Under the pieces are notes generated by a model. The model was not told the DNA's origin. It worked only from the letters and a program-made list of their open reading frames with translations, and did not search any database. A program made the position numbers and the translations under genes. A stretch of DNA of 64,000 nucleotides, taken from NCBI RefSeq assembly GCF_006345805.1, contig NW_021833039.1, forward strand, positions 22,458-86,457, read 5' to 3'. Positions 663 to 56,973 of the stretch are shown here, piece by piece (the first letter of the stretch is position 1; each line of letters starts with the position of its first letter). Origin of the DNA: Octopus sinensis. Its lineage: Eukaryota.

Positions 663-689
663 ATTGCCAATTTGAAGTTGGTGTGCACA

Positions 690-27387: not shown

Positions 27388-28936
27388 ATGCTGAGACTCT
27401 GTTTTAGTGTACTCATTTCGTGTTATAATCGTAGCACTCGGCCAAGCTCACTGCCAGCAGGGATTTGTCTAAGGGTATTCTCTGCCATTATTCCAGCTCC
27501 CCGTCTGTGCCTCAGTCCAGCACTCCCCCCCTCAGGGTAACCACTATACATGACTGGCATCAAGATCGTGGACTGTTCGTCAATTGAGGACTACTCCTCC
27601 AGCTCTGAGTTAGCACAACTAATAATGCAGAACAAATAATAATTAAGACGCCCAACTTTGCCGAGTCGATAAGTGAGGGAGACATAAAGTGGCACAAATG
27701 TAGGAGTACGACTAATTGACAGGCCTCGGGGACGTCGTCAATGTGGGGGATGTCCTGGGAGAAATAGAGACAGATAAGGTATCCACCACCCACCAACAGA
27801 CCTCCCTCGCTGTCATCGCCTCCTCCTCTGGCAAGATTACCGAATTCATTGCCTCCGACGAGTCCAGTGTCACTCCCGGCACTGACCTCGTCCGCATTGA
27901 CACATCATTCCACCCTACTGACCAATCGACTGCTCCTTCTACTCCCCCTACTGCACCCAGCACTGCCCCTACTCCACCCAGCACTGCCCCTACTGCACCC
28001 AGCACTGCCCCTACTGCACCCAGGACTCCCCCTACTGCACCCACCACTGCCCCTACTGCACCCAGCACTGCCCCTACTGCACCCACCACTGCCCCTACTG
28101 CACCCAGGACTCCCCCTACTCCACCCAGCACTGCCCCTACTGCACCCAGGACTCCCCCTACTGCACCGAGTGAGGGGGATGTGGAGAGCAGAGAAGGAGA
28201 GACGAGGGTGAGGGGGATTGTGTGATTGCAGATTAAAATGTCTCGGATGAGGAAGAGGATCGGGGAGAGACTGGGGGAGGCTCAGTCGACGTACGTGATG
28301 CTGACGACGTTCAACCAAGTGGACATGAGGTAGGTGGTGGTCACTCCCAGCAATGTCATCGCCATGCGCAAAAAGTACAATGATGTGGCCCAGAAGGAGA
28401 GGAATGTGCGCCTGGGGTTCCTCTCCGCCTTCATTGTGGCGGCCGCACGGGCATTGAGGGACACTCCCGTGGTGAACGCGGTGGTGGAGGGGGATTCCAT
28501 CATCTACCGGGACTACGTCGACATCTCCATTGCCATCTCCACCCCCAAGGGACTCGTCGTCCCCGTCCTCAGAAATATCCTCGGACTCAACTTTTTGGAG
28601 GTCGAACAGAAACTTGGGGAACTGTCGAGGAAAGCGAGGGAAGGGACACTGACTGTCGAGGAAATGGACGGAGGGACCTTCACAATCAGCAATGGGGGGG
28701 TCTTCGGGTCGCTCATGTCCACGCCCATCATCAATCCCCCCCAGTCCGCCATTTTGGGACTCCACGCCATCGAGGACAGACCTGTGGCCGTGGACGGACG
28801 GGTGGAGATTCGGCCGATGATGTACCTCGCCCTCACATATGACCATCGCCTCATCGACGGTCGCGAGTCCGTCACCTTCCTAAAGTCCATTAAAGAGGCC
28901 GTGGAGGATCCCGTCCGCATGATGGTGGGCATATGA
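27388..28936 (+). CDS. DLST: Dihydrolipoamide succinyltransferase (2-oxoglutarate dehydrogenase E2)
   Basis: Lipoyl domain [12 protein letters not shown]...IETDK; catalytic domain [38 protein letters not shown]. Confidence 0.97.
27950..28168 (+). repeat. Coding 21-bp tandem repeat (about 10 copies) forming a [14 protein letters not shown] linker in DLST
   Basis: Units actgcacccagcactgcccct, actccacccagcactgcccct, actgcacccaggactccccct read directly. Confidence 0.95.
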
Positions 28937-29089: not shown

Positions 29090-30205
29090 CATTTATTAAA
29101 TCACCAAGACCACGCTAAAAACCGAACAAATGTCACGTGATCCCGATGCACTCAACCAGGGACCTCATCCTCGCTCGGTGGTCTTTCCACGAGCCCACAC
29201 AAGATCGCACTGGGCGGCAGGCCGTTTTTGGCGGAGCAGTCGCTGACGGGCCCAGGTTCAGCTTGATGAGGTCTTCCAGAGAGGCTGGACCGGGGCGTTG
29301 GCTATCAAGTGACCAACGATCGGTTAATCTGAGGGCCCTTTGTTGGGCCTCCTCGATTCGCCTCCTGTTGGACCACGATAGCCGCGGACCCCATGATCCG
29401 CAAGCGTACGCAACACAAGGTTCGAAGTACTGGCGATAGATATTCGCCAGTACTGGGTGCGACCCGTTTTTCCGAATACCAGATAGAGTTCGCAGAATAT
29501 TCAGTTTATGTTCGCATTTGCGAAGGACGAAGGAGGTTGTCCACATGAGGGGAGAAACAGAGGTGCATGTCGAGGGTTACCCCTAGGACCGTCTGACTCC
29601 TGCAGAAGGGAACGGATATATTATTCAGCTTTAAGTCGACAGACGTCCTTCCCAATCTTTTATCCGAGGTGAAGAGGGACGTGGCGGACTTCGCCGCGTT
29701 TACTACGAGCCGGTTGTCCGTCAGCCATAGGTTCAGCCGATCCAAGTTAGCTTGGAGCCTTTCAGAGGCCTTCTGGATGTCCCGGTCCCGTGAGGCTAGC
29801 ACGATGTCGTCCGCGTATGAGAGAACAATGTCATTGTTGTCGAGGGGGCGAGGGAGGTCTTCCAAAAATAGGTTGAAGAGAGCCGGGGATAAGGGGGATC
29901 CCTGAGGTACTCCGTTGGGTAGAAGACGAGATTTGGACTTCAGACCACCGAGGCACACTCTTCTTCTTCGTCCACTTAGGAAGTTGGTAATCCATATTTT
30001 TAGCTTCGGAGGAAAGTCGGATTGGAATATCTTCCTTGAGAGGAGCTTCCTCGAGACGGAATCGAAGGCTTTATGGATGTCGACGGAGCAGAGCACGGTC
30101 TTTTGGTGCCTCGGTTTGCTGGCAAAACCGGTACAGATGAAGTTTGACAAGGATTGGAGGTACGAAGACGTGGACTTGGCCTTCTTAAAACCATGTTGAA
30201 AATGT
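29090..30205 (-). mobile_element. 5'-truncated LINE (RT), GIT-stop family
   Basis: VDIHKAFDSV, GVPQGSPLSP.LFN, SYADD; one frameshift near 29550; ORF ends GIT* then short UTR and AATAAA. Confidence 0.93.
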
Positions 30206-30288: not shown

Positions 30289-33200
30289 ATGGACGAAACC
30301 CAGTCGGAATTGCTATTCAAATTATTCTTCCCCCAAGCTGACATTTCACTCGTCCCGCTCGTCCGCCAAGTCTTTGCTACCGATGACTCCATTTCCATTC
30401 AAAACTTCATTTCCGTATTTTCAGAGTGGAGGCAGGAAGACAGTGCTTGCTCGACAGGGAACCCAGGACTGGACAATCCACCACTCTACGGGGAGGACAA
30501 ACTGGTGATGGACTACTTTGTCATATTGGTGATCCTGGCCGTGATGTACATTCGGATGGACAAATGTGTCCTCCTCTTTGTATTTAAGTGAGCGAGGGCA
30601 TGCTCTACGTCGACAAACTCGTCTCCCACTTGGAGGAGGAGAGTATTCCCCATTTGGTAGACTGTCTGAAGAATCAGCATTATGTCCTGATAAATCAAAG
30701 TAGAGGGACTAGACCATGCTTAGTCATGTCGGAGGGGGATCCCACCATCCACTCCACTCAGCAGCAAAGTGTTCGTCGACTACAACTCGAAAGTAGGGCA
30801 CTCCTCCTGATGTAGACTACCCACCCATTACTAGTCTGCTCGATGAGACAGTCACTTGGATTTGCCTGCTTGGTCATCAGACTGAGTGTTTGTGTCGACT
30901 CGGGAGTGTGCTCATGTCCTCTGCCACTGTTTGTCTTGTTAAGTAAAGTAGTTGGAGGATGTGTTTGCCAGCATGGCCGTCGCCCTCCCCTGCGTCCCCC
31001 TCTGCGATATACAACCCATCACTCACTTTGCCACTACAAACATGTCCTTGAAATTACTGGAGAACGTGGGAGCAATGTCGAGAGAGTGCTGTCTCCGATT
31101 TGTTTCGTACTTCCACTCTGTGTTGGGGACTGTCGGGCAAACTGACATTTGGACAAACTCACTGGTGTGGGCACTCATCAACCTGATAACCCTCATCGAC
31201 CACTTCGAGAGTGCCGCCCTCTTCTTCCTCTCTCTCGAGCACAAGGAGGGATATTACATTCCCCTCCTGACACATCTCCAGGGTATCCTTCTCTCCATTC
31301 CACAGAACACGGAGATTATCACCTCTTTCACTCCTTTCCCAACAATCCCCACATCTTCTTCTCCACGCCCGTCTTCCACTCTCTCGACACATACCTATTC
31401 TTGTTCGACAAGACTCTCCTCCAATATCCCCTCCCCCACGACGTGTTCCTCCAATCCGCGGGTGTTGTGTCCACTGTTATTGAGGGACTCCTTTCTCCAA
31501 AGGCAAGTTCATTCGACTATTCATAGAAACAACAATCGACCCCCCTTTATCGACATTGGGCCTTCCTTCTGCTTAACGCCTCCAAATTTGGTTACTTCGA
31601 ACTGGTCCCCCCCACTAACCCCCGCGTCCTCCACGATTTGCTGGCTATCAAGTTGTGTGGAGAGGAGGCTGGGCGCTCCTGCCCTTTTTGGATGGAAATG
31701 ATAACCAGCTTGTATTTGGATATAAACATAATTCTGGCACAGGTTGGCTGCCCGTTTGAGTTGCAGTCCATTCTCCGAGTGTCCCCCTCCTCCTTCATCG
31801 ACAACCTGTTGAGGGAAGACAAGTCACTCGACATATTCCTGACCGGCAATTTGAGAACATGCGGAAGTGGCCGACTCATGTCTCTTCTGGGGTTCATTGC
31901 CAACGCCACGGTTCTGCATTACGGTTCAGTCCCCGTGTTGCCACAGCAGACGCCATTTCCGACCGAGACATGCTTGAAAAACAACTTTCTGTGTTCCTCC
32001 TCAGAAAAGCCTCCACTTACATTAACATCGCCAAGTATTTCAGGGTCTGGAATCGTGTCTACAACGTCTCCGTCGAGCCCTCCACAATGCTCGAGGACAT
32101 TGCTGACTACCGCGAACCATACTTTTGTCGCCACGTTGGGGAAACTGTCTCCGGACATTATTCTCTCAAAGGCAAATGGGCATTGTCTCACATTAAGGAG
32201 AGTTGGCCCTCAAATTATTCGACGGGGAATATTCGTGCCGAACAGAGATCAGTTCAGAGATGTACAACACAATGTACCACGAATATCAACTCAGGTGGTC
32301 CCTTCCTCTATTCGTAGAGTCAAGAAAATGTCCAAAACTGTTCACGACGTCCAGATTTGGCTGTCCTTTCCCTTCAACCCAGACAAAACGAACTTTGAGG
32401 CAATCAACTCGCCCCACTGGTTCAGCCTCATTCTGTCCAGTCTTGTGGTTGGGCCACTCCCCCATTTTCAGTTGATTGATCGGAACATGCTCACCGACGT
32501 GTGTTCTGACCTCCCTCTCCAGTTGATTGTACACTTTTTGTTTTGCTCGGCTTATTTCTGGGCCCATCGACCCCCCCAGTCCACCTGTGTGGCCGAGGAT
32601 GTGATTGTCCCCTCCTCCAAGTTTAGTGAAGCCGTGACCGCCTCCTTCGAGTTCGAATCCACCAAATACAGCATTCTCCAACTTGTCCTGCACAACTATC
32701 AAGCGTACGGGGGCCTGTGTGAGGACATTTCCCCGGGCAAGCCCAGTTGTGAGGCACTGGAGGGGGCAACCCCGCGCAAACACGTTCTGCGTCTCCTCAA
32801 TGCTGTATGCCTGCTGCTTCATTCAGATGTACTATGTCCTCCACGACGTGTCTCACTCCCCTCTCCCCTGGCCGAAGCCTCACTTCTCGAATGTCTCCCG
32901 TCGCACCAAAGATCGAATTTTCGAGGAATTCAGTGTCCGTCGGACCAAATGTCTGCAAAGTCGATTTGTGGAAGGATTGTCCGCCAAAGTGAGCAAATCG
33001 GACGACCTGCTGCCTCGGTGTGTCATCTGCCGTGAAACTGGGGACTCGTGGCAGAACAGGCTGTGCCACACTTTCTCGGTCAAGTCGTGGGATGGTTGGC
33101 TGTGATTGTAATGCAGTGCTCGGGTTCACTCGGACGGGGGAGGACGGGGTGCCCGCCAACATTTCCATGGCCCGCCAGATCGAATGTTTATACAAAAACT

Positions 33201-34817
33201 ACCGAATTGTACTCCTCAACCTCACCACTGCAGAGTCTGGTCAATTTGGTGATTAACCTGTCGTTGTGTGATGGAGTGTTGGTGACGTCCTGCGAACATG
33301 TCATTCACAAAAAGTGCATGTCTCGAATTAAAGCCACCCCCAAGTGCTGTCCTCTGTGCTCCACCACCTTCAACTGGGCTACCCCACTCACTAAGAAAAG
33401 GAAACCCGCCTCGAATGCTGACACGCGGAGTGTCCGTGAATGTTTGGAGGACACTTTTGGTGCCGACCTCCGCGACCATCGGGTAGTGCCCTCAATAATG
33501 TCCCAGCTCAAATTGAACAACCTTACCGAGTTTTTTGACGTGGTCACAAACCAACTGCCGGAGAAAGCATACCCTCTCGTCCTCCCCACCTCCGAGGATA
33601 CCATTTCCTGCGTGTTCTCCTCCACCATTCGGTAGTTCTGTGCCCCCTCTATTAAGACAAATATTGGAGTACAGACTGATTTGCCTCAAGACGGATTCCA
33701 CTATCCGGGCATCGGCGAGTTTCCGTTGGTGTCCCCCAACCACGTGCTAGTCGAGTTGTGGTCATTCATGGGAGTGGTTCAGCAGAAGTACACCCACGTG
33801 GAGGACATTCTCCATTTCTTTGACTGTCTGACCATCAACCCGAATGCCTGCGAACTGCCCATTGTGTTTGTCGACCCCATCACCCTCCTACTCGCATTCT
33901 CCCTCAGCATCCCCCTCCATTTACTCGAAAGTAGGTCCTGTGAAATAATCAGAACACTTTCCTCAATTGGTGACCACGTGCTGTCGACTGGCATTCTTCA
34001 AACATGTCGTGTCGGAGGGTCTCTCTCCTAAGGATGTACTCACGTCTTCCCTGGTTTCCGAATCCAACCTGCTAACCCACTTCCTCAAAATCTCCGCCAT
34101 TCTGCAAGCCCTCTTGTTCGGAGTGGAAGCAAACCCTTCCACAACTGACTCGATTGGCGATATTTGTGACATTCTGGGTATTTCCATTTCTGAGGTGAGA
34201 CGGGACACTGCTCGACTGTTTGCGGAATGCACACATTCGGAGGTATTGCTTTATTTGGTCATTCGGTCAGCAGGCTAGTCTCCTCAATGTCGTCCCGGAT
34301 CCTGCTCTCGTTTCTTTGCCGACCCACCTCGTGGACTTGTATGACCTCATTGCAGACAGGGTGTGCTGGCATGACTCCTAGTAGACAGAATAACTCGAGT
34401 TATCCTTTGAGCGGCCTCTGTCTTTTGTGCGGAAGTGTGATGCGTGGTCCTGTGATGAATACTGCATGTGGATGTGTGCATAAGGTATGGACTATGTGGC
34501 AGTGTCCAGCACTTTAAAGTATGCGGACGAGGACGAGGACTGTTTATGCACAACGGAGAGTGCGTGTTCTACGTCAAGAACTACCAGGCAGTAGAATTCC
34601 TCACACTTTACTACGACTCCCATGGTACACTTGTAACTTGGTATACTATCCACTCATTTCGACAGCCATGACCCTAATATATCAGATGGTCAACTTGTTC
34701 AGAGTTTATACGCGACTGTGGTCAAGTATTGGGAAAGAGGGGAACTTGATTTTCTATTCAAATTATCGGGATAACACATTTCTTAAAAAATATGTTTTTG
34801 ATATCCTTCCTATATGA
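30289..34817 (+). CDS. UBR1/2/3-family RING-H2 E3 ubiquitin ligase (no UBR box seen)
   Basis: LEDIADYREP..GHYSLK, split RING-H2 (CVIC...TSCEHVIHKKC...CPLC), C-terminal LCLLCG...CGRGRGLF...LYYDSHG; many micro-introns; exon structure only partly resolved. Confidence 0.8.
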
Positions 34818-34904: not shown

Positions 34905-36275
34905 AATCAAAATTTATTCCAAAGACCACCGTTAACCAAAAGAAAAACTAACTAGGTGATCCCGACGAATTTGATCATTGCTCTCAGCTTCGCTCTGTGC
35001 TGCTCTCTTGAGCCCACACAAGATCGTTGAGGGCGGATCGTTCCTTTATACCATTGATGCTCTTTTATATTCTTCTCAATGAGAGTTTCGAAAGAGATTG
35101 GTGGTTTGATAGCTTCACCTGTATACCACCTTTCGGTAAGTTGAAAGCTCTTTTCTGGGTTGCGGAGATTTTACGAATGTTTGTATTCGAAATCAGTGGC
35201 CCCCATGAGGCACAAACATATGAGATACATGGTTCGATATACTGTGAGTAGAGTGTTTTAAGTATAGGGTGATTTCCCATTTTCCATAGACCAGTTAGGC
35301 ATTTCAGGAGGTTGATTTTCTTTTCACATTTGTTCAACACATTTGTGACATGTTTAGAGAAGTTCATGTGCGTGTCATAAGTTAATCCCAATATCTTTTG
35401 CCATTTGCTGAAAGGTAATACTCTTCCCTCCACAACAACTTCGATTGAAGTTTTCGATAGTCTTTTGGCTGAGGAGTAGAGAGTTGTGACAGATTTTTCT
35501 GTGTTGATCGACATCCGGTTTACGTTAAACCACTCAACTAGGTGATCCAGGTTTTGTTGTAATCTTCCTTTTGCTGTTTGGATGTTCTGGTCCCGTGATG
35601 CCAATACAATGTCATCTGCATAGGCCAGCAGCAGATCGTCATGCCATTAGGCTTCGGAATATCGGCCGTAAACAAATTGAATAGGAAAGGTGATAATGGT
35701 GAGCCCTGGGGTACACCATTTGGGAATAGACGGGAAATGGAACGAATGTTTCCAAAGCATACTCTTCCTCTTCGACCGCTGAGGAAGTTAGTCAACCAGA
35801 GTTTGAGGTCTTCAGGGATGTTTGATTGGTAGATTTTCTATGCTAGGTTTTTTCTAGGCACAGCGTCGAAGGCTTTGTGGATCTCCAGCGAACAAAGTAC
35901 AGTTTTCTGATGTCTTGGCTTACACGAAATGCCAGAATGGATAAAGTTAGTCAAGGAGCTAAGGAAGCTTGCAGTGGAACAATCTTTTTTGAATCCATGT
36001 TGGAAAGCCTTGTTGGGAATGCTGTTAATGATTTTTGTGAGGATGAGTTTTTCCAGAGTTTTTGACATGGAACATAATAGGGAAATTGGCCTGAAGGAGG
36101 CCGGCTCTTGTTTTGGTTTTCCACTCTTCAAAATTGGGCGGATGTTTTCCAATTTCCAAATCGTTAGGATTGAGTTGTAGTTAATCGACCAATTGTAGAT
36201 TTTTATGAGAACACTGATTCCCTCATTCCCTATGTTTTTCAGGAGAATTATAGGAATGCCGTCGGGACCATGTGA
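34905..36275 (-). mobile_element. 5'-truncated LINE (RT), GIT-stop family, decayed
   Basis: GPDGIP, SFRPISLL, HGFKK, KAFDAV, PQGSPLSP, AYADD; stops and frameshifts; ends VGIT*. Confidence 0.93.
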
Positions 36276-36968: not shown

Positions 36969-38735
36969 TTAGGGGGCCCTTTGATCAGAAGATTGTGAAA
37001 CATGAAAGTGGACTGCGAGCCAATTGCCTTCGACGCGTTGCCACACAATAGTCTGGACAAATCGAACACAACTCACTCCGTACAACACCGACCTAACACT
37101 TTGAGCAATTATCCAACTCATCCTGTCGACGCAGAATGGAGACGAGTGTTATGACCGCGCTGTTGTCTGACAGAATGCGCACGTTGGGGAGCTCCACCGA
37201 CGACACCATGGGGATTGTGGCTGTCCGTTAAGACAAATAAAACTGAGTTTAAACTGCGATTGATAGTATTCGCGAGCACACACGAGAATACCCCCAGTGT
37301 GCATGTCCAGCAGTGTCGCGTCCTTGGAAACGAGTTTACTGAAATGTAAAATAGAAAGACCACCGAAAAGTGTCACTGTCGCTCTCAGCAATGCAATTTA
37401 CCAACTGATTAGACAATCTGATTATTTCGTCCGGGGGAGGCGCAGGATGCACTTTCTTGTCACCAGAATTGTTAGTCAGCTTATCTAGGAATACTCAACA
37501 GCAAGGTACTGAGGGTGACGCTCTTGGTCGCGAAAAGTGTCGACAGAATGGCAACCTGGGACTAGAAAGGTCTCCCTCTCACCTTTAGTTTCCGCCTGGC
37601 GTTGAATTTTTTGAGTTGGTTGAGAGTGGCCTGGCGGTGGAAAGCGGGGATGATGTTATCCGCATTCTGGCCGAATTAGGCGAGGACAAACAGCAATCCA
37701 GGGCAGTTTGAGGACATCGGCTGCTGTGAACCGTTCTTTGGCGTCAACGTTGAGCAAATTCTTGATGATGTACTTTGCTTCCTCGGAAACCAAATCCCAC
37801 TCGGGGGAAGGGAACTGGAATAAGGGAGGTGGCTACATTGACAATCCCCGACTTGATCTGTCTGAACAGCCCCTTGGACGTGTCGTCCCAGAAGGGAGGA
37901 TACCCAGCCAGGAGAATGTACATGACCACTCCCGCCGCCCAGTTGTCCACGGGGAAGGAGTAGGGCACCTTGGACACCACCTCGGGGGACAGGTAGCCGG
38001 GAGTGCCAGCCAGACCAGGAATGAGTGGACAAGACAACCATGCCAGGCGGGAGCACCCGTGGACTCGACGGCCAGCCCAAAGTCGGCAATCTTGAGGACA
38101 GCGTCGCGGTCTTTGGAGGAGAGGAGGAGGTTTTCGGGCTGTGGTTAAGTGAGGGCGTGCCTTGAGGTCTCGGTGGACTATTTTCATGGAGTGGAAGTAG
38201 GCGATGCCGGAGAGGAGTTGTTTCATGCAGCGACTGAGGGTGAGTGTGGGACATACCTCGCGTCGGCCTCGCTGTAAAAGTCCCTGGCGACAATGTCATC
38301 GAACAACTCGCCTCCACTCACCCTGGGAATGAGGACTGGACGTACAGTTCGAGGATGATGTAGAACATTCTCTTGGACATGATTGCGTCACACAACTCGA
38401 CTGTGCGTGAGGGGGAGGACTCACCAATGTTCTCGTGCTTCAGTTTCCGACATATCCGCACTTCCCGCTCTATTTTCTGGAAGTCTGCAATGTCCCACAT
38501 CACTTACCGCGCAGGGGCAACTTTTCCGTGTTGAATATTTTGGCGGCCATGTTTTTTCTGGTGGCAATGTGAACGCAGTTCTTGACCACCGAGAAGGCCC
38601 CTCTAACGTTGACAGAGCGCAGTACTTTCCGATTTGGCTGCCCAGTTGGTAGCGACTCTCGAACTCGTCATCAGACTTGGACAAACAGGTAGAGGTGAAC
38701 ATTCTAGAATGTTTAGGAATATCGTCGTAGGCCAT
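36969..38735 (-). CDS. CAMK2: Calcium/calmodulin-dependent protein kinase II
   Basis: GK|GAFSVV, HRDLK|PEN, DFG, AGTPGYLSPEV, regulatory HRQATLNQLKKFNARRKLK|VAILST, hub domain ending W..VHFH. Confidence 0.95.
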
Positions 38736-38950: not shown

Positions 38951-41440
38951 TTAGTGATCATACAGTCGGGAGTATCGGGCGAGTGTCCACAGAGGGAACA
39001 CATTCCGGTAACTGTTGTAGGAAATGGCACAATTCTCGTTGAACACTCCCGACACGTTTTCCTACACTATTTGCCCCACTCCACCTGCGGCCAATCCCCG
39101 TTCGGGAGTTGTCGACTCTTCAGGAGGGACACGCCCCTTTCGATGACGGACACATTGGGGAACCTACAATGTGGACAACTCCTACTTGACAGCCATCAGT
39201 CCCAGCAGGACGAAGGACGTGTTGACGACCTGCGAGGTGGAGGACGACACGTACTTCCTCAACTCACAACTCTCGAATTCCTCCCCCCACCCTCCGTCGG
39301 CCAACTGTCTCTCCAACATGAAGACAACTCCCTTGGTCAACTCCAGCAGGGGGGCACTGCAATGGTCGGCCTACACTCACCCGTCCACACACGTCCTCCC
39401 GTACTCCCCAAAGAACTCCATGGCGAACCAGAAGGCGTAGGTGAAGCACACTCCCCACGACCTACGATGAGGGAGGACACCCACCCAATCCACGACCCGT
39501 CCGGCCTCTGCTTCTTTCGGATAAAGTCAAAGCCGGCATCGACCACCCTCCTGACAGGTGAGTGCCACACACAACTTGATGTCCTCTCCTCGGTAGTCGG
39601 GGAACTCCCTGTGGAACTTGAGGAGTCCTCTGAGGGCAGCACTCGTGCACTCCACGAAGGTGTAGTCGATCATTATATTCCCAAACACCTCCGAAGGGTT
39701 GAACAACTCCAGCAGGCGTCCCCCTCGCTGTCTCTCGTAGGAGGCGAATCCCCCGTCCCCACAAACCATGTCCATAATCTGTCGTCGAGTGAGGGGAGTA
39801 CACAGTCCACGCAGTCTCTCAGTCTCCCCAATCCCGCCTGAGGGAGGCAACTATATTTCCTGCACAGAACAAGAAGAGCCAGTCCCTCCCCAGTGCAGTC
39901 ACTGATTATGTACGAGTAGTCGTTAGTCGAGAAGGGAAACCCCCCTTTATTCCGCTGGCGATAGAACTTGGCATAGTCGGGGGGGTTGTCCTCGATTTGC
40001 GAGTCAATCACCCACTCCACTCCTCTTCTCACACTCTCCACTATTTCCGGGTGGTCCTCCATGTCCTTCATCTACCAAACACACGGCCTCCTCAACCTCC
40101 AACATGGCCAGACATGCAAACACGGTGTCCCAGAACTGAGACCCGTTCGTCCCCTGCGAGTGAGCCCGACCAGTACCCCCATTTTCATGCCGTCCACCCC
40201 CAGCCACAAAAAGTCGTCCAGTCGGTCGACGTGTCTCTGAAAGGCCAGCATGTCCCCCCTGTGCCACCGGACGAGCATGTTCATGCACTTGGATATCTGC
40301 CAGTCAACACACAACCCCACCGGCCCCACTCCGATGTAGTCCGTGAACGTGTCCTCCGCACAGATATGCTCGTATATCACTTCCAAACTCCTCTTCCGGA
40401 TGGACGGCCAGTGGAGTGCCTCGTACAGGTTGGCCAGTCCGTGGAAGCAGCGAAGGGGGAGGGAGTGAGGAGTGTACAGGTCACTCTCGGCCACGTTCAT
40501 TCGATTGGCAGTCCACTGAATTGGCTCGAATGGGCCATCGGGGAATAACTCCTGGAATAGGAGAGGAAGGCAACCGATCGGAGTTGGAGGATGAGGTCGT
40601 CGAGGGGGGCAGTGATCCTGAGGGCATAGCAGTAGCTCATAGCAATGTAGATGACTCGACAGTGACACCACATCTTGGACGGGTGGAATGGCAACCACTC
40701 GGGGAGGAGCCTTCCTTTACTCGAATAGGCCAACCACAACTCGGGGAGGACTGCGTTGAATCCATCCCAATCATAGCAATTGAGCACTCCCAACCAAAAC
40801 TTGCCCCAACTGGGAATTCCCAGAGTGCCCCCCAGTCGAGCCACAACAGCTCTGCCTCTGCACATGATGTCCTCCCCACTCTCCACTCCCAGCAGACGGA
40901 GGGACACGTAGTTCAGCACAGTCCCCAGCACTGTGGGCGGGGAACAGATGTGTCTACTCTTAATTGGAGGAATCGTACAGTCCCCACCCACCCGACGGAC
41001 ACTCGACTGACCGCAGATATCGAATCATCTCCGCCTTCTTCTCCGCACACAGTTCGACCTTTGTGATGTAGCACACAATGAGCATTCCTTCCGTGTGGGG
41101 GGAGACCAACCAGCCATCAGGAAGAGTGGCCCGCCGTAGTCGTACGCCCAATGTCCATCAGTCGCCTGAATGGCTCGCATGAAGAGTGCTGCGTGTTCGG
41201 CATGTTCTCCCGCTGTCGTGGGGTGTCTCGCTGTCGTCATGTCTTGGATGCTCAGCCCCACCGAGTGTCTCTCCAAAATGCTCTGCTGTTCGACATTGTC
41301 CTGTGGGTAGTAGAACCACCGCTGTCGTCCTTCCAATTATATCCTCCCCACCTACCGCGCTCGCAAAGCAGTCTCCACCGAGTCAGGTCAGTCGCCGGCT
41401 CCGTTTTGTGCGGCCCTCCGTAATTTCGTTCTCTCGACAT
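38951..41440 (-). CDS. LSS: Oxidosqualene cyclase (lanosterol synthase family)
   Basis: [44 protein letters not shown]|[29 protein letters not shown] repeats, YRNVFPLW. Confidence 0.96.
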
Positions 41441-41965: not shown

Positions 41966-42453
41966 CTAATTGTAAGAATTGAGGCTGTTATTAGAAATAA
42001 TGCCCAAAATAATGTTCAGGCTTATAGTCTGGCCAATATTCCCACATCTCGGTCGACGAGTAGTCGTAGGTGGACTGATATTCTGTCGGAGTGGAATGAA
42101 GTGTATCTCCGTAGTACCCACTGTCCCCAGACACATCCGCATATTCCGCGAATTTGAGGTTGCCGTGTTGAGCCGCCGCCTTTTTGCTTTTCCTGTCCTT
42201 GGCCCGCCTGTTCTGGAACCAGACCTACCGACATGTTCACAAGTCAAACCTGGATCCTCCCTTCAGAGAGGTTAATGAACTGGGAAAGACGTTCTCTGAC
42301 GAATATGTCGGGGTACTGTGTTTCCGTGTATGATTTTTCCAGCTCCTCAAGCTGATGTTGACTGAAGGCAGTTCGATGTCTCCGACGTCCCAGGAGAGCA
42401 GGACGGGGTTTGGTGTGTGGAATGGAATGAGAGTCATTACTGGTTGGTTCCAT
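41966..42453 (-). CDS. PRD-class Q50 homeobox protein (Prop-like)
   Basis: [46 protein letters not shown]|[12 protein letters not shown]; 25-nt intron 42225-42249. Confidence 0.92.
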
Positions 42454-44388: not shown

Positions 44389-45860
44389 ATGCAACTTTTT
44401 GTTTTTATTTTGGCTACAGTTCGGGGCTGGTCTCAGAATATCCAAGAATTACAAGTAGAGTATGAGACGAGGTGGTTCGAGACGATGGTCGTGTTTCCCT
44501 TTTAATGAAGAACAGGTGGACCATTATGGCTACTACAACAACGACTCGTTCAATTTGAAATATCTGTACTCGGATAAATACTACAAGCCCGGTGGTCCCG
44601 TGTTGTTCTATCCGGGGAATGAAGGAGCAGTGGAGACATTTGCCCAAAATACTGTAATGCTTATGTTCCACTCCCGAGGGGTTCATTTGGGAGTACGCCC
44701 CAGTCTTGAACGCCACCGTGGTCTTCGCAGAACACCGTTATTACGGAGAGTCGGTGCCCTACGGCAACCTCTCGACACTGGACTACCTGACCATCGAACA
44801 GGCCTTGTCCGACTATGTGCATCTCCTCTCCAGTCTGTTCCCGGTGGACACCAAAATAATCGCAATCGGTGGGTCGTACGGGGGACTGTTGAGTGCGTGG
44901 CTGAGGATGAAGTACCCCCAGTACATAGCCGGGTAGGGTGTGTGCACTACTCAGGGCCATTGCGTCATCCGCGCCTTTATACTTGTCCAACGAACTCGGC
45001 GACTGTTCCCGTCCCTACGAGACCATCACCAACAGTTTCCGTCAGGCTAACAAACACTCCCCGCAAAACATCAAAAGGCTGTGGAAACTGCTGGAGGAGG
45101 CGGGTAGGGCCGGCAGTTCGATTATAGACACCGCATACTTGTTGGGGAGATTAAACTTGTGCAACAATACTGATAACCATTTACTGTACAATGTGCTCAA
45201 TATATTCTTCTACTCGGCAATGTTCAACTACCCGACCACATCCACATTCGTGACTGCCCTGCCCCCCAACCCAGTCAATGTACGCTCGTAATCATTTCCA
45301 GTTGATTGGAGGATTCTTTTCGAAGCCGGACTTGGAGGAGGACGAGCTAATCGACGCCCTCGCATCGACAATCAATTTGTATTTCAATTACTCAGGAAAT
45401 AGCTTGGAGTGCATTAATCCTGACGTGGACGAAAACGTGGTGTGGATTTATCAGGTTGGCAATGTGGAGGGACGAGTAGGTCTGCACTCAACTGACAGAA
45501 CACATTTGCTCGGTCGAAAGTGACACGAACATGTTTCCGACTCTGAATTATAACTTGTCTTTTATTAACACAATCTGTCATGAGAAGTACGGCGTTACTC
45601 CCCGGATAAAATGGCTGGCGAGGGAATACAACCTGCACGACATGACAGCTTACAGCAACATTGTATTCAGCAATGGAGAATTGGATCCGTGGTATGGAAT
45701 GGGAGTGTTGGAGGACATCAACGAGAGTGTCATCTCCGTTTTGATCGAGGGGGGAGCTCACCACTCTGACTTGATGCAGTCCTCACCCTCCGACTCGCAG
45801 AGTGTGATCGAGGCCAGGAGAAAGGAAATGGAAATGATGCAGAAATGGATTACAAACTGA
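44389..45860 (+). CDS. PRCP: Lysosomal Pro-X carboxypeptidase (peptidase S28)
   Basis: Signal peptide, VDHY, FY.GNEG, FAEHRYYGES.P, GGSYGG nucleophile, NGELDPW, GAHHSDL. DPP7 not excluded. Confidence 0.92.
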
Positions 45861-45891: not shown

Positions 45892-47827
45892 TCACTCCTG
45901 CAAAAGACTAACAAGTGCGTCAAAGAATCTACTCTTGTCCTCGTCGAAAACCTCGACGACTACTCATAAGGGAGAGACCTCACCATTGGAGTCAAAGTAG
46001 TCGGGAATAAAGCGGGCATTGCTTTGCACGGCCGCCTGCTCGAATGCCTTGCCAAACAGACTATACTAAGGAGAGTGGACTGACTTGTTGGAATCGTCGG
46101 AGGAGTCGTAGGGGGGAATGCCCACAATCATAATAGTCTGGTCAGCCCTCCTGGCCGGCACACTCAACACCAACGGGAGAGTCCTGGCCCGTCGATGGCG
46201 ACTCTACTCTGGGGAAGTGAATGCCAACCACGGACACGAATGCGTGGAGCAGATGCCGGGCAAAGAGCTGAATACTGACAGGACTGGAGTAACTATAGAG
46301 GGAGGAATCCTCCTTTTAATAAAAACAACAACTTCCTGGGAGCAGTAGAGCAAGTTCCCCGTGGAAATGACGTGTCTCATGTCGAGGAGACTCTGCAACT
46401 GAAGGAAGGCAGCCTTGTACTTCTGACACACCACGTCAATGGGCGACCGGAGTTTGGCGATGTCGAAGCTGTGAATGAGGACAACACTCACCAGCCCACA
46501 TAATCCATCGCCTCCGCAAAGTAGGACGACCCCGACACCCCCTCCTCCTACCCTTCACCCAAACCAGTACCGATTGACTCAACACACTGGACAGGATGTG
46601 GACATGGTCGGAGGCAGCGAAGGCAGACCCGTAGCCTTGTCGGATGGTGAAGGAGGACATGAACAGACCACAGTTCTCCAGTCTGTACTCGGGCATGTGC
46701 GTCTCCATCAGTGTCTCCAGTTTGGACTTGAAGTGCACGTCCATCGAGGCGTACTTCTGCTTGCACTGCTCCAACGGAATCCTGCCAGTCGACAACTCCT
46801 CCCAACCCCAACTGGGCAAAGAACTCGTAGAAACGTTTCCTTCCGTTAATTTTCCATATCCCGAAGACGGAGGCGGGGACGAGTGTGTGCCACAGACTCT
46901 CGAACAGTGACCAATGTCGGTAGAGAACAATGTTCATTTCCCTCCTGAATGTGACCGTGAGGGGCGTCTCCGAGGCTCTGCCACTAACTTGGGGAGGAGA
47001 CCGATTATTAAGGCGGAGGGCGTGTGACTGGAGGGCAATCACCGCCTCCATGTATTTGTCCTCCACCACTTTGTTGGTCAGGAATTGCTCAGTGCAGCCC
47101 ACCACTGCGTACCACAACAACAGTTTGCTGTCCTTGGATAGTTTCCACGACAGTTCGAACATGAGGAGAGCAGTCTGCGTGTCAGTGCACATCATTACAC
47201 TCGAAACTGACCAACTGAACTTGGAGTACTCAAACAGCAGGGAATCCCTATGTTAGTGACACACACCACACCGATTGGCAGTCCACTCCCAAGTGTCCTC
47301 CTCACTCTCCTGGTCGCGGAACACGGACTCGTAGGGAGGCACGTGCCCAACTTGGTCCTCCTTCGAGCAGATGACCACTTGGAGGGAGTTGTACACGTTC
47401 GCCACGTCCAAAGGGCGGTGACTGGCAGTGTCAGGCAGGACTACACAGACTTGTCCAGAATGTAGAATCTCCCATGTTCGGGCTGTTCCAGCAGCTCGCA
47501 AATGTCCAAAGTGGCCCCAAAATTTATTAGAACTGCCACGACGTTCTGCACATTCCGAATGACGGGCAACCTCTTCCCAGGTCTGCTGATTGTATTTTTC
47601 GCAGAATTCATTCCAGCCAGAGACGGGGATGAAGGTGTAGGTGAGTTGGTCACTCTCCAGCATGTGCTAGACATACCCCGGGAGGACTACCTGCAGACAG
47701 GCCCATGCACACACCGCGTCCACGTCGCAGGCCGCGAAGACGATGACTCTCTACAAATAGCCCGCAGACCGACCTTCCCGAGTAGTTTGACATAAAAATC
47801 GGTTCTTAGGTCATGCACCACAACCAT
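45892..47827 (-). CDS. CDC45: Cell division control protein 45
   Basis: CDVDAVCA, LINFGATLD, HRPLDVANVY, LYRHWSLFESL, FSTDIGH, EDKSRFFDALVSLL-like C-terminus. Confidence 0.95.
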
Positions 47828-52825: not shown

Positions 52826-53136
52826 TCACCATCCTCCGACAGTCCTATAGTGGTGTGAATAATATTAAATATAGTAATGAGCATAAAGTATGTGCTATTT
52901 ATTACGACGGAAATCACTTTTGAAGGACACATTCAATGTCTTACCCTCTGAGGCACCCATCAAATGGAAGGTGAGTACATCCTCCGTGTCCTCGGCAGTC
53001 CTATGTGAATAATAATAAATATGGCAATAGTAATAAGCATAACGATCAATGTAAAAGGTAATATATGTGCTATTTATTACGACGGAAATCACTTTTGAAG
53101 GACACATTCAATGTCTTACCCTCTGAGGCACCCATC
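52826..53136. repeat. Tandem duplication of the ELAV-like gene 3' end
   Basis: 73 bp identical at 52889-52961 and 53064-53136; flanking parts (about 52826-52888 vs 52975-53063) similar but with indels. Confidence 0.9.
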
Positions 53137-54079
53137 TTGGACATGTTCAGGGCGGCCACGGCAGCACAGGCCTCCTCGTATTTCACAAAGTTGACAAAAC
53201 CAATACTACTCGCCCAGGTGGTGTTGCCTGGGAGGGAATTGACCGAGGCAATGGCCCCGAACCGAGAAAAGAGTTGGTACAAGTGGAGATTAGTAGATCC
53301 TGGGATTAGGTTGGACACATAGACACAGTGGTGTTGCACAGGGGGCACATTCCGGGCAACAGGACTATACCGAAAGTAGTCATAGTGGGAGTAGGGGAGG
53401 AAGCCAGTGGTCACTTTGACGGAGGACTGTCGGGCATATCGCACAATTATGTGTTTGTCAGTGCCTGGGAGTACTTGTTTGCAGTTGAGCACGGCAATGG
53501 CCGACTCTGCACACACAGGGTGGTAGAACATGACCATTCCACTGCACTTGGACATGCCGTGGGCGTCCACCAACAGTTTGAGGGACTGCACAGGCCCGAA
53601 TGTCTCGAAAAGCATCTTCAAATTGTTTTCCATGAACGAGGGCGGCAGGTTCTGCACGTACAAATTCCGCAGTTCAGTCTTGCCCGTCTGACAGCGAGAG
53701 AAGCTGACGTGGATGGCCTTTTGGTCGACGACATGCCCGTCGAGTGTGTCGATGGCCTTCTGGGACTGTTCCTGTGTGCCGTAGGAAATGAATCCGTAGC
53801 AGAGGGAGGTGCCACACGACTGGTCCATCATCAGTCGACAGTTGGTGACCTGAGTGAGGGGGAGGCCGTACATTGGGGACTGTCGTGAAGAGGGAGAATA
53901 ACGATTCGGGGGTGATTGAGGGGGCCAGGTTGCTGACAATCAGTTCGCACTTGTCCACTACGAGTGTGTGGGGGAAATGCCCAATGGACTGCTGAGGGGG
54001 GAGAGGGGGATTCATGTACCCGTTTCTCGCATTTGTTTCTACATTGTAGGGCTGGATAACAACAACCAACAAAACTCAT
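53070..54079 (-). CDS. ELAV/Hu-like three-RRM RNA-binding protein
   Basis: LIVSNL...CRLMMD...SLCYGFISY...AIDTLDG, NLYVQNLP, RRM3 VYVSNL...GFVNF...LNVSFK. Confidence 0.88.
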
Positions 54080-55184: not shown

Positions 55185-55870
55185 TTTATTAGGAACAAAA
55201 ACAACGTCATAACCATAATTAACTATTTCAGGTGATCCCAGCCTCTTTTAAAAACCTTCGCATCTTTTCTGTGTGTTCTACAGCGCATTGTCTAAGAGGG
55301 CGGGGATCCCGAACTTTTTTCCTGAGGTCTCCACCGTTTTCTTTCACGATTTCTTCTAGTCCATTTGGTTGAATTTTGTTCCCTGTGACATTCGCTAGGA
55401 GGTTTACAATCTCCATTTGAATATTGTCGATTTTTTCGACATTTGAATATGCTAGATTGCTTCCCCATACTGTACATCCGTAACCAATTGTCGGTTTAAT
55501 GTATTGGGTGTATAGAGACTCTAATCCGTAAGTTCCTTTGGCGTCTTCCAAGTTTCCAAGAAATGCTTTAAAAGGTTTAATTTCGTCAACACGTTTTCGG
55601 TATGGGGAGTAAAGGTTAGAAAGGTGTCAAAGGTGATCCCAGTATCTTTAGAGTTTTATTTGGAGGAATTGATTTCCCTTCCATGGTCACATTTATCGAC
55701 TAATTCCTCAGTCTTTTGTTAGTTGTGAAAAAGGTTAGCTCAGACTTTTCCGGGCTTGCTTTCAACAGATTGGCATTGAGCCATATACACAGGTTATTTA
55801 TATTTTTCTGTAATCTTCTTGTAGCTTCGCTGACACATATATCCCTCGAACAAGAATCCTCGGGATCCAG
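55185..55870 (-). mobile_element. LINE 3' fragment, GIT-stop family
   Basis: RLQKNINNL..WL, LYTQYIKP..YGCTVWG, ends EAGIT* then TAATAAATAAA. Confidence 0.85.
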
Positions 55871-55929
55871 GTTCTTTCCGACCCATCTCTCTGCTTTGTG
55901 TCGCTTCGAAAGTTTGGGAGATTCATTTT

Positions 55930-56900
55930 GGATCACATATATCCGCACACCAACCTGGTTTCGCCCATCTCACTCCACCTCTACGCACCTAACAAAACTA
56001 ACGGACTTTATTGCGGATGGTTTTAATGACAACAAACCTCCACTTCGCACAATTCTGGCCACGATCGACATTGCAGAAGCCTTCGACAAGACTTCCCGTC
56101 ATGTTCTTTCAAACAATATTACAGCGACGAACATTCCCCCAATGATTCAAAAATGGCTCAAGTCGTTCATATCCGGCAGACTGGGTCGCACTTTGTTCAT
56201 GTCGATACTTACCGAATGGAGTCCCGCAAGGATCGGCTCTCTCCCCGGTCTCGTTTAACCTCCACCTGAGCAGTTTGCCTAAGCTGGAAGACACTTTGAT
56301 CCTGTCTTATGCTGCTGATTTGATCTTGGCGGCTAGAAACAAGAACATTTCAACTGCTTCCACAGGCCTACAAACTCATCTGGATTTATTGAAGTCTTGG
56401 CTTGTAACCAACCACCCTCTCCTTCCAAGTCCAGTGTTACGTTCTTCACCAGTGACCGTCGCCAGCTAGACCAGCATCCAGAGTTGAAAATCTTTGGAGA
56501 ACGCCTCCCCATCTCAAAAACTGATCTACGACCAACCTCTTACCTTCTCCCCTCATGTTGACCACATAATCAAAAAAGTAAACAAAAAGAGGAATGCCTT
56601 CCGTGCAGTGGCCGGATCCTCCTTCGGTCAAGACAAAGAAACGCTAAGAATAATCTACAAACAATATGTCAGGACCTCCCTTAACTACGCTAGCCTCACT
56701 TGGGGCTCCTCTCTTTCATCCAGCAACATTCAAAAACTCCAAAGGATCCAAAATGGTGCTTTCCGATCAATTGCCGGATGCATGTTATTCACTCCTTCCG
56801 ACCATCTCCACTGGAAACCACCATTCTCCCTGTGGAAGATCACCTTCGCATCCGGAACCTGCAATTCCTCAGTGCGGTCATGGAATCAGACCATGTCATT
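55930..56900 (+). mobile_element. Decayed LINE RT of a different subfamily, head-to-head with the previous one
   Basis: TIDIAEAFDK, QGSALSP, SYAADL (YADD mutated), YKQYVRTSLNYAS..W; frameshifts. Confidence 0.85.
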
Positions 56901-56973
56901 TCCTCACCCATACAAAAACAGCCGTTTCAGTCATTGCAAACCATTTCAGTCCACAGAGAACTATGAAAATGTC

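What the first reader, a model, noticed from the sequence alone, without database searches (positions are those of the whole stretch)
39860..40200. Oxidosqualene cyclase with an unusual T/Y/I product-determining triad
Seen: GMKMG|GTNGSQ gives Thr at the human LSS 381 position (lanosterol-type). [16 protein letters not shown] gives Tyr at 449 (normally C/Q in lanosterol synthases, H in cycloartenol synthases), Tyr for the conserved Trp451, Ile at 453 (cycloartenol/parkeol-type; V in lanosterol synthases), and DCTGE instead of DCTAE. Established: mutagenesis of AtCAS1 (Y410/H477/I481) and yeast Erg7 shows these positions set the deprotonation site. Inference: the product may be parkeol, a lanostadienol isomer or a mixture. 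Retention of de novo cyclisation in a reduced (probably parasitic) genome is itself notable.
Basis: partly seen in the sequence, partly recalled or inferred. Interest (0 to 1): 0.7.

Follow-up and report, generated by a model that had tools for sequence, protein, structure and literature searches.

The report
Parasite lanosterol-synthase gene, odd active-site residues
The window carries an intact animal-type oxidosqualene cyclase (sterol ring-forming enzyme) gene, cut by fourteen 22-26-base introns typical of a dicyemid or myxozoan parasite; its catalytic machinery is fully kept, but the three residues used to predict the product read T/Y/I, a combination not seen in about 200-270 other cyclases, so it probably still makes lanosterol but this needs an assay.

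Summary
On the minus strand, 41440..38951, lies a 15-exon, 717/718-aa oxidosqualene cyclase (OSC) gene with no stop codons. It aligns end to end with human lanosterol synthase 1W6K (E 3e-264, about 54% identity).

Mapped to human numbering:
- T381 is kept.
- The changes are C449Y, G450S, W451Y, V453I and A458G.
- Every landmark catalytic or cavity residue I checked is conserved, including D455, C456, C533, H232, Y503, W387, F444, W581 and F696.

How unusual each change is:
- Tyr449 occurs in 0 of 270 sampled OSCs.
- Thr381 together with Ile453 occurs in 0 of 207.
- Tyr451 is common outside animals (46 of 150, typically in Q-G-Y-T-V-type motifs, as in the rust fungus Melampsora).
- DCTGE is ordinary outside animals (21 of 150).

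The gene is native and vertically inherited. It falls inside Metazoa with 100% bootstrap, and 12-13 of its 14 mini-introns sit at Lingula LSS intron positions. The lineage evolves fast: 50 of 285 near-invariant animal columns are changed. The cluster of changes in the motif is not significant against that background (P about 0.08).

My best reading is a functional LSS orthologue that makes mainly lanosterol. An altered product (parkeol or a delta-7 isomer) remains possible, at about 20-25%, and was not tested. Interest is moderate.

The parts
38951..41440 (-). Whole OSC (lanosterol-synthase orthologue) gene: ATG at 41440, stop codon at 38953-38951; 15 exons, 14 GT-AG introns of 22-26 nt; 718 aa (717 aa with the alternative 28-nt intron 8)
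   Evidence: Homology-guided spliced alignment. End-to-end match to 1W6K. TIGR01787 638 bits against a cutoff of 322.7, and Pfam PF13249 + PF13243.
41356..41440 (-). exon 1 ([29 protein letters not shown])
41111..41329 (-). exon 2
   Evidence: the intron after it is at a Lingula LSS intron position
40979..41087 (-). exon 3
40735..40953 (-). exon 4; it is followed by an in-frame-length 24-nt intron (40734-40711) that is hidden inside a longer ORF
40575..40710 (-). exon 5; holds [10 protein letters not shown] (40670-40641) with the H232/C233/Y237 equivalents kept and Q235V, V236I, L238I, P239A changed
40321..40551 (-). exon 6; followed by a hidden in-frame 24-nt intron (40320-40297)
40177..40296 (-). 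exon 7, ending in GMKMG (40191-40177)
40154..40176 (-). 23-nt intron 7 between GMKMG and GTNGSQ, at the same protein position as a Lingula LSS intron
40097..40153 (-). exon 8, starting GTNGSQ (40153-40136); the T381-equivalent codon ACG is at 40150-40148. In the alternative model the exon runs to 40085.
39802..40071 (-). exon 9. It carries [16 protein letters not shown] (39933-39886): F444 eq 39933-39931, Y449 eq 39918-39916, S450 eq 39915-39913, Y451 eq 39912-39910, I453 eq 39906-39904, catalytic D455/C456 eq 39900-39895, G458 eq 39891-39889.
39576..39778 (-). exon 10
39485..39550 (-). exon 11
39381..39461 (-). exon 12
39186..39356 (-). exon 13
39085..39163 (-). exon 14
38951..39061 (-). exon 15, including the stop codon (...ARYSRLYDH*)

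Best explanation
This is the native, vertically inherited orthologue of animal lanosterol synthase (LSS/ERG7, an oxidosqualene cyclase). The genome's 22-26-nt introns mark it as a dicyemid (Dicyema-like; my preferred guess) or a myxobolid myxozoan parasite. The gene is intact and under purifying selection.

Inferred mechanism, from homology to 1W6K:
- The Asp of SDCTGE (D455 equivalent), polarised by the C456 and C533 equivalents, protonates the epoxide of 2,3-oxidosqualene.
- The conserved aromatic cage (W387, F444, W581, F696, Y98, Y704 equivalents) guides chair-boat-chair cyclisation to the protosteryl cation and the 1,2-shifts that follow.
- The H232/Y503 dyad removes the final proton.

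The substitutions C449Y, G450S, W451Y and V453I lie in the strand that backs the deprotonation region. V453I is the only landmark first-shell change besides T502S. Residue 449 is second shell: it contacts 453 and pairs with the Y503 equivalent in plant enzymes.

I take these substitutions to be co-adapted packing changes in a fast-evolving lineage. I predict lanosterol as the main product, possibly with minor parkeol or 9beta-lanosta-7,24-dienol.

Shown here: gene structure, orthology, residue identities, rarity of the triad. Inferred: enzymatic activity and product.
For: Gene integrity and family:
- Intact 718-aa ORF over 15 exons.
- E 3e-264 to human LSS over residues 8-724.
- Best database hits are all animal LSS at 52-55% identity.
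- TIGR01787 and Pfam cyclase N and C domains score above their thresholds.

Conservation:
- 21 of the 23 landmark cavity/catalytic residues I checked are identical. The exceptions are V453I and T502S, and S502 also occurs in 6/120 animals.
- 82.5% of near-invariant columns are kept, against 53% identity overall, which indicates purifying selection.

Origin:
- The protein falls inside Metazoa with 100% bootstrap, and Capsaspora falls outside.
- 12 of its 14 introns sit at Lingula LSS intron positions, or 13 with the 25-nt alternative intron 8.
- GC3 is 0.72, within the range of the neighbouring genes (0.58-0.77).
- F444, the residue switched in sea-cucumber parkeol and lanostadienol synthases, is kept (PMC9236903).

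Why lanosterol is the likelier product:
- T381 is the lanosterol-type residue.
- His at 449, which cycloartenol formation needs, is absent (bioRxiv 10.64898/2026.05.26.727834).
- Triads that depart from the canon still give lanosterol in kinetoplastids, Methylococcus and Saprolegnia (PMC2817430, PMC5101207).
- The changes around the motif are not in excess of the lineage-wide rate.
Against: - Ile453 is absent from 120/120 animal LSS, and in my sample it never co-occurs with Thr381 (0/207).
- Desmond & Gribaldo (PMC2817430) regard position 453 as the only reliable lanosterol/cycloartenol indicator.
- Tyr at 449 has no precedent (0/270). It sits where N, Q and H give very different product ratios in Arabidopsis CAS1.
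- From my own memory of Matsuda-lab papers, not checked here: CAS1 variants with T/H/I or Y/N/I give lanosterol plus 12-35% parkeol or delta-7 isomer.
- No expression, splicing or enzymatic data are available.
- No transcript-derived copy of this protein was found in the protein collection. The organism seems to be absent from that collection altogether.
Confidence: 0.6

Rival explanations
1. A neofunctionalised OSC whose main product is not lanosterol. It would make parkeol (delta-9(11)), 9beta-lanosta-7,24-dienol, or a substantial mixture, because Y449/Y451/I453 reposition the Y503/H232 proton-acceptor pair. This would parallel the sea-cucumber enzymes, but by a different residue route.
For: - The T/Y/I triad is unprecedented.
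- V453 and C449 are invariant in 119-120 of 120 animal LSS.
- Residue 449 is a second-shell residue that contacts 453 and partners the Y503 equivalent. Single changes there or at 453 shift the products of AtCAS1 (bioRxiv 10.64898/2026.05.26.727834; PMC5101207).
- Animals can evolve such enzymes (PMC9236903).
- A second cluster of changes (Q235V, V236I, L238I, P239A) flanks the H232 base.
Against: - F444, the proven switch in holothurians, is kept.
- The H232/Y503 dyad and T381 are kept.
- The excess of changes near the motif is not significant.
- Triads are poor predictors across lineages (PMC2817430).
- In my recollection (unverified) yeast Erg7 V454I still makes only lanosterol.
- If this is the organism's only OSC, a non-lanosterol product would need an adapted downstream pathway. 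The window holds one copy.
Confidence: 0.23
2. A cycloartenol-type cyclase, as the 'position 453 rule' (Ile = cycloartenol route) would predict.
For: I453. PMC2817430 states that only position 453 is indicative of lanosterol versus cycloartenol.
Against: - Cycloartenol synthases invariably carry Y381/H449/I453 (PMC5101207; 27/27 in my sample).
- H477N abolishes cycloartenol formation (bioRxiv 10.64898/2026.05.26.727834).
- Here 381 is Thr and 449 is Tyr.
- The protein is phylogenetically an animal LSS.
Confidence: 0.03
3. A relic: a gene in early decay, or one retained without cyclase activity, in a parasite that takes sterols from its host.
For: - Parasitic lineages commonly lose sterol synthesis.
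- Four invariant positions next to the catalytic Asp are changed.
- There is no expression evidence, and no transcript-derived protein was found.
Against: - No stop or frameshift in 2.15 kb spread over 15 exons in a fast-evolving genome.
- All 14 introns keep GT-AG ends and the reading frame.
- The catalytic residues are intact.
- Constraint is site-specific (82.5% of invariant columns kept against 53% overall).
- Codon bias (GC3 0.72) is like that of neighbouring genes.
Confidence: 0.07
4. An artefact: sequencing errors, host contamination (cephalopod or fish LSS), or horizontal transfer.
For: None specific.
Against: - At least 7 nucleotide changes underlie the 5 replacements.
- The 22-26-nt introns and GC3 match the neighbouring genes of the same contig, and no host genome has such introns (PMC13644364).
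- Intron positions are those of animal LSS, and the protein lies inside Metazoa.
- Identity to mollusc and vertebrate LSS is only 53-55%.
Confidence: 0.02

Closest known systems
Animal lanosterol synthase (human LSS, PDB 1W6K; EC 5.4.99.7)
   Same: - Full-length collinear alignment at about 54% identity.
- Same N-terminal [15 protein letters not shown] motif.
- Identical D455/C456/C533, H232/Y503, W387/F444/W581/F696, Y98/Y704/Y707 and T381.
- Shared intron positions with the Lingula LSS gene.
- Placement inside the metazoan clade.
   Different: - C449Y, G450S, W451Y, V453I, A458G and K462A in the catalytic-acid strand.
- Q235V, V236I, L238I and P239A next to H232.
- A branch roughly 3-4 times longer than the other animal LSS branches.
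- Introns of 22-26 nt.
Plant/protist cycloartenol synthase (Arabidopsis CAS1; triad Y410/H477/I481)
   Same: Ile at the 453/481 position. A bulky ring side chain (Tyr here, His there) at 449/477, which stacks above residue 453/481.
   Different: It lacks Tyr410 and His477, both of which cycloartenol formation needs. It has I452 rather than Pro. It is only 33-40% identical to the plant and heterolobosean OSCs sampled.
Sea-cucumber parkeol synthase and lanostadienol synthase (PMC9236903)
   Same: Animal LSS-derived enzymes with altered active-site residues. They are a precedent for non-lanosterol OSCs in Metazoa.
   Different: Their switch is F444L or F444Q with the triad unchanged. Here F444 is kept and the triad is changed. 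They arose by tandem duplication, whereas only one copy is seen in this window.
Fungal-type lanosterol synthases (ERG7-like; motif Q-G/S-Y-T-V-S-D-C-T-A/G-E)
   Same: Tyr at the W451 position, Ser at 450 in some, and DCTGE in many. The named examples are Melampsora and Trichoderma. T381 is shared.
   Different: They have Q449 and V453. They are 39-40% identical and fall outside Metazoa in the tree.

Membership tests
Squalene/oxidosqualene cyclase superfamily (terpene cyclase/mutase) | Full-length match to the family HMMs (TIGR01787; Pfam SQHop_cyclase_N + _C) | tested here: met
   TIGR01787 638.1 bits against a cutoff of 322.7. PF13249 130 bits and PF13243 158 bits.
Oxidosqualene cyclase (protosteryl type) | Catalytic acid motif D-C-T-A/G/S-E, with Asp455 and its Cys456/Cys533 partners | tested here: met
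   SDCTGE at 39903-39886. D455, C456 and C533 equivalents are present. The Gly variant is found in 21/150 representatives.
Oxidosqualene cyclase (protosteryl type) | Deprotonation dyad H232/Y503 and the cation-stabilising aromatics (W387, F444, W581, F696, Y98, Y704) | tested here: met
   All are identical to human LSS in the 121-sequence alignment.
Animal LSS orthologue | Phylogenetic placement within Metazoa and a shared gene structure | tested here: met
   NJ tree with 100% bootstrap for Metazoa including the window protein. 12-13 of 14 introns sit at Lingula LSS intron positions.
Lanosterol synthase by sequence signature | Triad 381/449/453 = T or Y / C, Q, H or N / V (Summons et al. 2006, as cited in PMC5101207 and PMC2817430) | tested here: not met
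   The triad here is T/Y/I. Position 381 fits, but 449 (Tyr) and 453 (Ile) do not. I therefore file the gene as an LSS orthologue whose product is unproven, not as a proven lanosterol synthase.
Lanosterol synthase by function | Converts (S)-2,3-oxidosqualene to lanosterol | not testable with these tools
   This needs heterologous expression and GC-MS.
Cycloartenol synthase | Triad Y381/H449/I453 | tested here: not met
   Only I453 matches.
Holothurian-type parkeol/lanostadienol synthase | Leu or Gln in place of F444 | tested here: not met
   The F444 equivalent is Phe (TTC, 39933-39931).

The most novel reading that the evidence does not exclude
The sole OSC of a dicyemid (or myxobolid) parasite has shifted its final deprotonation through a previously unseen Thr381/Tyr449/Ile453 arrangement. 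On this reading it makes parkeol, a delta-7 lanostadienol or a mixture as its main product. That would be a second, mechanistically independent origin of a non-lanosterol OSC in animals, after sea cucumbers. It would imply a non-canonical sterol or triterpenoid metabolism in a roughly 30-cell parasite.
Probability: 0.2. Interest if true: 0.65.

Novelty: new member of a known kind. Interest (0 to 1): 0.4.

Why it matters
There are three reasons.

1. **Enzymology.** Positions 381/449/453 are the textbook sequence predictor of lanosterol versus cycloartenol or parkeol. This is a natural enzyme with Thr/Tyr/Ile in an otherwise canonical animal LSS scaffold. It is a clean test of how far that predictor holds, and of what a Tyr at the second-shell position does.

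2. **Parasite biology.** Parasitic flatworms, nematodes and arthropods are sterol auxotrophs. An intact, constrained OSC in a genome as reduced as a dicyemid's or a myxobolid's suggests that at least this oxygen-dependent step is still needed. It gives a concrete entry point: look for SQLE and CYP51, and measure the parasite's sterols.

3. **Annotation.** The gene shows how 22-26-nt introns, several of them in frame and invisible to ORF scanning, must be modelled before active-site residues can be read off.

If the product turns out to be plain lanosterol, this is an ordinary housekeeping orthologue with lineage-specific drift.

Tried and rejected
- I used the single exon 40056-39802 for the representative search instead. 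I made no structural model and did not try to get around the restriction.

- **Exact look-ups.** Two window ORFs are not on record.

- **Organism identification through a repeat.** A search with a LINE reverse-transcriptase ORF gave at best 44% identity, so the source genome is not in the protein collection.

- **Motif-only search.** A 30-aa query was too short. The 41-aa query found no candidate sharing three 5-residue words. That is a limit of the word index, not evidence that the motif is absent elsewhere.

- **Literature.** The Dicyema genome paper and its supplements have no usable statement on sterol genes. No supplements are held for the myxozoan intron paper. The M. honghuensis paper says nothing about OSC. 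No open paper gives the yeast Erg7 T384Y or V454I data, so those figures stay marked as my own recollection.

- **RNA genes.** Rfam and tRNA scans of the window found nothing.

- **Ideas considered and rejected.** Sequencing error, host contamination and horizontal transfer are dealt with under the rivals. A hidden mini-intron inside the [16 protein letters not shown] exon is excluded, because the exon is collinear with human LSS without gaps from residue 419 to 464.

- **Intron 8.** I replaced it with the 25-nt alternative (40096-40072), which falls exactly on the conserved Lingula intron position. The choice changes only four or five residues in a variable loop.
Full report
**1. What is in the sequence**

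The region 38.9-41.5 kb holds many overlapping ORF fragments on the minus strand that resemble an oxidosqualene cyclase. I ran a homology-guided spliced alignment, a dynamic programme that allows GT..AG introns of 18-69 nt. It joins the fragments into one gene with ATG at 41440 and the stop codon at 38953-38951. The gene has 15 exons and 14 introns.

All the introns are 22-28 nt long. Several have lengths divisible by three and contain no stop codon, so they lie hidden inside ORFs. Examples are 40734-40711 and 40320-40297.

The product has no internal stop. It aligns over its whole length with human lanosterol synthase: 1W6K, E = 3.2e-264, query 5-716 against chain 8-724. It passes TIGR01787 with 638 bits against a cutoff of 322.7, and it matches both Pfam cyclase domains. 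Only one copy is present in the window.

**2. Check of the observation**

| Feature | Window coordinates (minus strand) |
|---|---|
| GMKMG | 40191-40177 |
| 23-nt intron | 40176-40154 |
| GTNGSQ | 40153-40136 |
| [16 protein letters not shown] | 39933-39886 |

The HMMER alignment fixes the numbering:

- T381 = Thr
- F444 = Phe
- C449 -> Tyr
- G450 -> Ser
- W451 -> Tyr
- I452 = Ile
- V453 -> Ile
- D455 and C456 are kept
- A458 -> Gly

The codons are TAC, TCG, TAC, ATA, ATC and GGG. They need at least seven base changes from the animal consensus, so a single sequencing error cannot be the cause.

**3. How unusual it is**

I used two samples. The first is the 120 best hits, all animal LSS at 52-55% identity. 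The second is 150 representatives of 50%-identity clusters, found with the exon that carries the motif.

| Position (human numbering) | Window | 120 animal LSS | 150 representatives |
|---|---|---|---|
| 381 | T | T 120 | not counted separately |
| 449 | Y | C 119, N 1 | H 68, Q 51, C 17, N 10, I 3, E 1 (no Tyr) |
| 451 | Y | W 120 | W 103, Y 46 |
| 453 | I | V 120 | V 88, I 58 |
| 458 | G | A 118 | A 101, S 27, G 21 |

Tyr at 451 typically occurs in Q-G-Y-T-V-type motifs. The named example with exactly that motif is the rust fungus Melampsora; Trichoderma LSS has the related QGYGV.

Among the 207 sequences that cover all three triad positions, the triads are T/C/V 123, T/Q/V 39, Y/H/I 27 and Y/Q/V 6, plus a few rare ones. 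Ile453 occurs only with Y/H, apart from one pair of ascomycete OSCs (Periconia) with S/Q/I. It never occurs with Thr381.

The published catalogues list the same triads (PMC5101207, PMC2817430). So Tyr449 and the T/Y/I combination are unprecedented as far as I could sample. Tyr451 and DCTGE are ordinary outside animals.

**4. Is it more than lineage-wide drift?**

The protein sits on a long branch. It is 53-55% identical to every bilaterian LSS, while those LSS are 65-78% identical to one another.

Of 285 columns that are identical in at least 117 of 120 animal LSS, 50 (17.5%) are changed here. In 444-462, 5 of 14 such columns are changed (P = 0.078). The densest 12-column window is 449-491, with 7 changed. 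Its count is reached by 679 of 5000 shuffles. The cluster is therefore not statistically exceptional.

The catalytic cavity is much better conserved than the rest of the protein. I checked 23 landmark residues, chosen from my own knowledge of the 1W6K literature. Of these, 21 are identical. V453I and T502S are the exceptions, and S502 also occurs in 6/120 animals.

A second group of changes flanks the H232 base: [10 protein letters not shown] at 40670-40641, with Q235V, V236I, L238I and P239A. It is not significant either (P = 0.11).

**5. Origin of the gene**

A neighbour-joining tree on 687 ungapped columns, with Kimura distances and 200 bootstraps, puts the protein inside Metazoa at 100%. 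Capsaspora, fungi, Willaertia and a plant OSC fall outside.

I fetched the Lingula anatina LSS gene (L001) and mapped its 19 introns. Twelve of the 14 mini-introns lie at the same protein positions. A thirteenth coincides exactly if intron 8 is the 25-nt GTTGAGG...GGTAG (40096-40072) rather than the 28-nt alternative. I prefer that model, which gives 718 aa. Only intron 1 has no Lingula counterpart.

The CDS has GC 0.57 and GC3 0.72, within the range of the neighbouring genes (GC3 0.58-0.77), in a window of 0.43 GC. The gene is therefore native and vertically inherited. It is not a contaminant and not a transfer.

**6. Which organism?**

Introns under 30 nt are reported among animals only for Dicyema and for myxobolid myxozoans. 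The reported median lengths are:

| Lineage | Median intron length | Source |
|---|---|---|
| Dicyema sp. | 27 nt | PMC6543705 |
| Thelohanellus kitauei, Myxobolus rasmusseni | 22 nt | PMC13644364 |
| Henneguya salminicola | 27 nt | PMC13644364 |
| OSC gene in this window | about 23-24 nt | |

The source genome is not in the protein collection, so I could not identify it directly. I lean towards a dicyemid, for three reasons:

- The window carries several LINE reverse-transcriptase copies, and the D. japonicum genome is 49% repeats with many LINE-1 copies (PMC6736024). M. honghuensis repeats are mostly DNA transposons (PMC8855578).
- No Thelohanellus protein appeared among the OSC hits. This argument assumes that the Thelohanellus proteome is in NCBI, which I recall but did not check.
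- The conservative exon-intron structure fits what is reported for dicyemids (Ogino et al. 2010, as cited in PMC6543705).

This is an inference, with roughly two-to-one odds.

**7. Mechanism and product**

By homology the enzyme should work as LSS does:

- The D455 equivalent, assisted by the C456 and C533 equivalents, protonates the epoxide.
- The aromatic cage steers cyclisation to the protosteryl cation and the migrations that follow.
- H232/Y503 remove the final proton.

The literature shows three relevant things.

- 381/449/453 influence the last step. In AtCAS1, H477 is a second-shell residue that contacts I481 and pairs with the Y503 equivalent. H477N converts the enzyme to a lanosterol synthase, and I481V does so partly (bioRxiv 10.64898/2026.05.26.727834; PMC5101207).
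- The triad does not transfer reliably between lineages. Kinetoplastids with Y381, and Methylococcus and Gemmata with H449, make lanosterol. Desmond & Gribaldo keep only position 453 as indicative (PMC2817430).
- In sea cucumbers the switch to parkeol or lanostadienol lies at F444 (PMC9236903), which is unchanged here.

With Thr381 and no His449, cycloartenol is very unlikely. Ile453 with a bulky Tyr449 could loosen or shift deprotonation. In my recollection of Matsuda-lab work, which I could not verify in the open library, CAS1 variants with T/H/I or Y/N/I give mostly lanosterol with 12-35% side products, and yeast Erg7 V454I stays accurate.

I therefore rate the outcomes as follows:

| Outcome | Probability |
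|---|---|
| Mainly lanosterol | about 0.6 |
| Altered main product | about 0.2-0.25 |
| Inactive relic | about 0.07 |

One speculative note. The summed side-chain volumes at 449 + 451 are similar for C+W and Q+Y. They are larger, and similar to each other, for H+W (cycloartenol synthases) and Y+Y (this enzyme). That suggests compensated packing rather than random damage. I did not test this.

**8. Retention in a parasite**

The window alone cannot show whether SQLE, CYP51 and the rest of the pathway are present. The Dicyema and myxozoan genome papers I could read say nothing on the point. The integrity and the site-specific conservation of the gene argue that the cyclisation step is still used.

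**9. Verdict**

- This is a new member of a known family, an animal LSS orthologue. Its product-determining triad is unprecedented, and the functional meaning of that triad is open.
- Interest is moderate (0.4). It would rise to about 0.65 if an assay showed a non-lanosterol product.

Noticed in passing
window 38951-41440 (all 14 introns, e.g. 40734-40711, 40320-40297, 40176-40154): The introns are only 22-26 nt long, with GT-AG ends, about 54% GC and no polypyrimidine tract. Several are in frame and invisible to ORF scanning. Among animals this is reported only for Dicyema and myxobolid myxozoans, so the window probably comes from one of these parasites.
   Followed up: partly
window 27941-28167 (+), upstream of ORF 28334-28936: A 21-bp tandem repeat of 10.8 copies (ACTGCCCCTACTGCACCCAGC) reads in frame as (TAPTAPS)n. 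It lies between a lipoyl-domain-like end (...[12 protein letters not shown]) and the 2-oxoacid dehydrogenase E2 catalytic domain (PF00198, E 1e-69). So the Ala/Pro/Thr-rich interdomain linker of a DLST-like gene is encoded by a young DNA tandem repeat.
   Followed up: partly
window 40641-40670 (-): Next to the proton-accepting His232 equivalent, four columns that are near-invariant in animals are changed (Q235V, V236I, L238I, P239A; [10 protein letters not shown]). The group is not significant on its own (P = 0.11).
   Followed up: partly
window 42244-42453 (-) and about 37650-38735 (-): The OSC is flanked on the same strand by two genes. About 0.8 kb upstream is a paired-class homeobox gene (PF00046; [34 protein letters not shown]...). 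About 0.2 kb downstream is a CaMK-like protein kinase, itself split by mini-introns.
   Followed up: partly
window 29506-30150 (-), 35065-36152 (-), 55716-57105 (+), 11234-11881 (-), 14105-14923 (-): There are several LINE-type reverse-transcriptase fragments. The closest database proteins are only 44% identical. There is also one Tc1/mariner-type transposase ORF (PF01498). The left third of the window (1-24 kb) is AT-rich (31-40% GC) and has few genes.
   Followed up: partly
window 143-663: A 97-bp tandem repeat of about 5.6 copies (96% matches over the core copies) lies at the left edge of the window. Its function is unknown.
   Followed up: no
window 46548-47195 (-), 44462-45127 (+), 53070-53939 (-), 33048-33635 (+): Other gene fragments were recognised by Pfam: CDC45, serine carboxypeptidase S28, a protein with three RRM domains (an apparently intron-less 289-aa ORF) and a RING-finger protein. 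All are ordinary animal nuclear genes, with GC3 of 0.58-0.77 where measured.
   Followed up: no
window 38954-39841 (+), 39997-40548 (+), 40416-41066 (+): Long ORFs of 183-295 aa run antisense to the OSC exons. They are by-products of the GC3-rich codon usage of the sense strand and are not genes.
   Followed up: no
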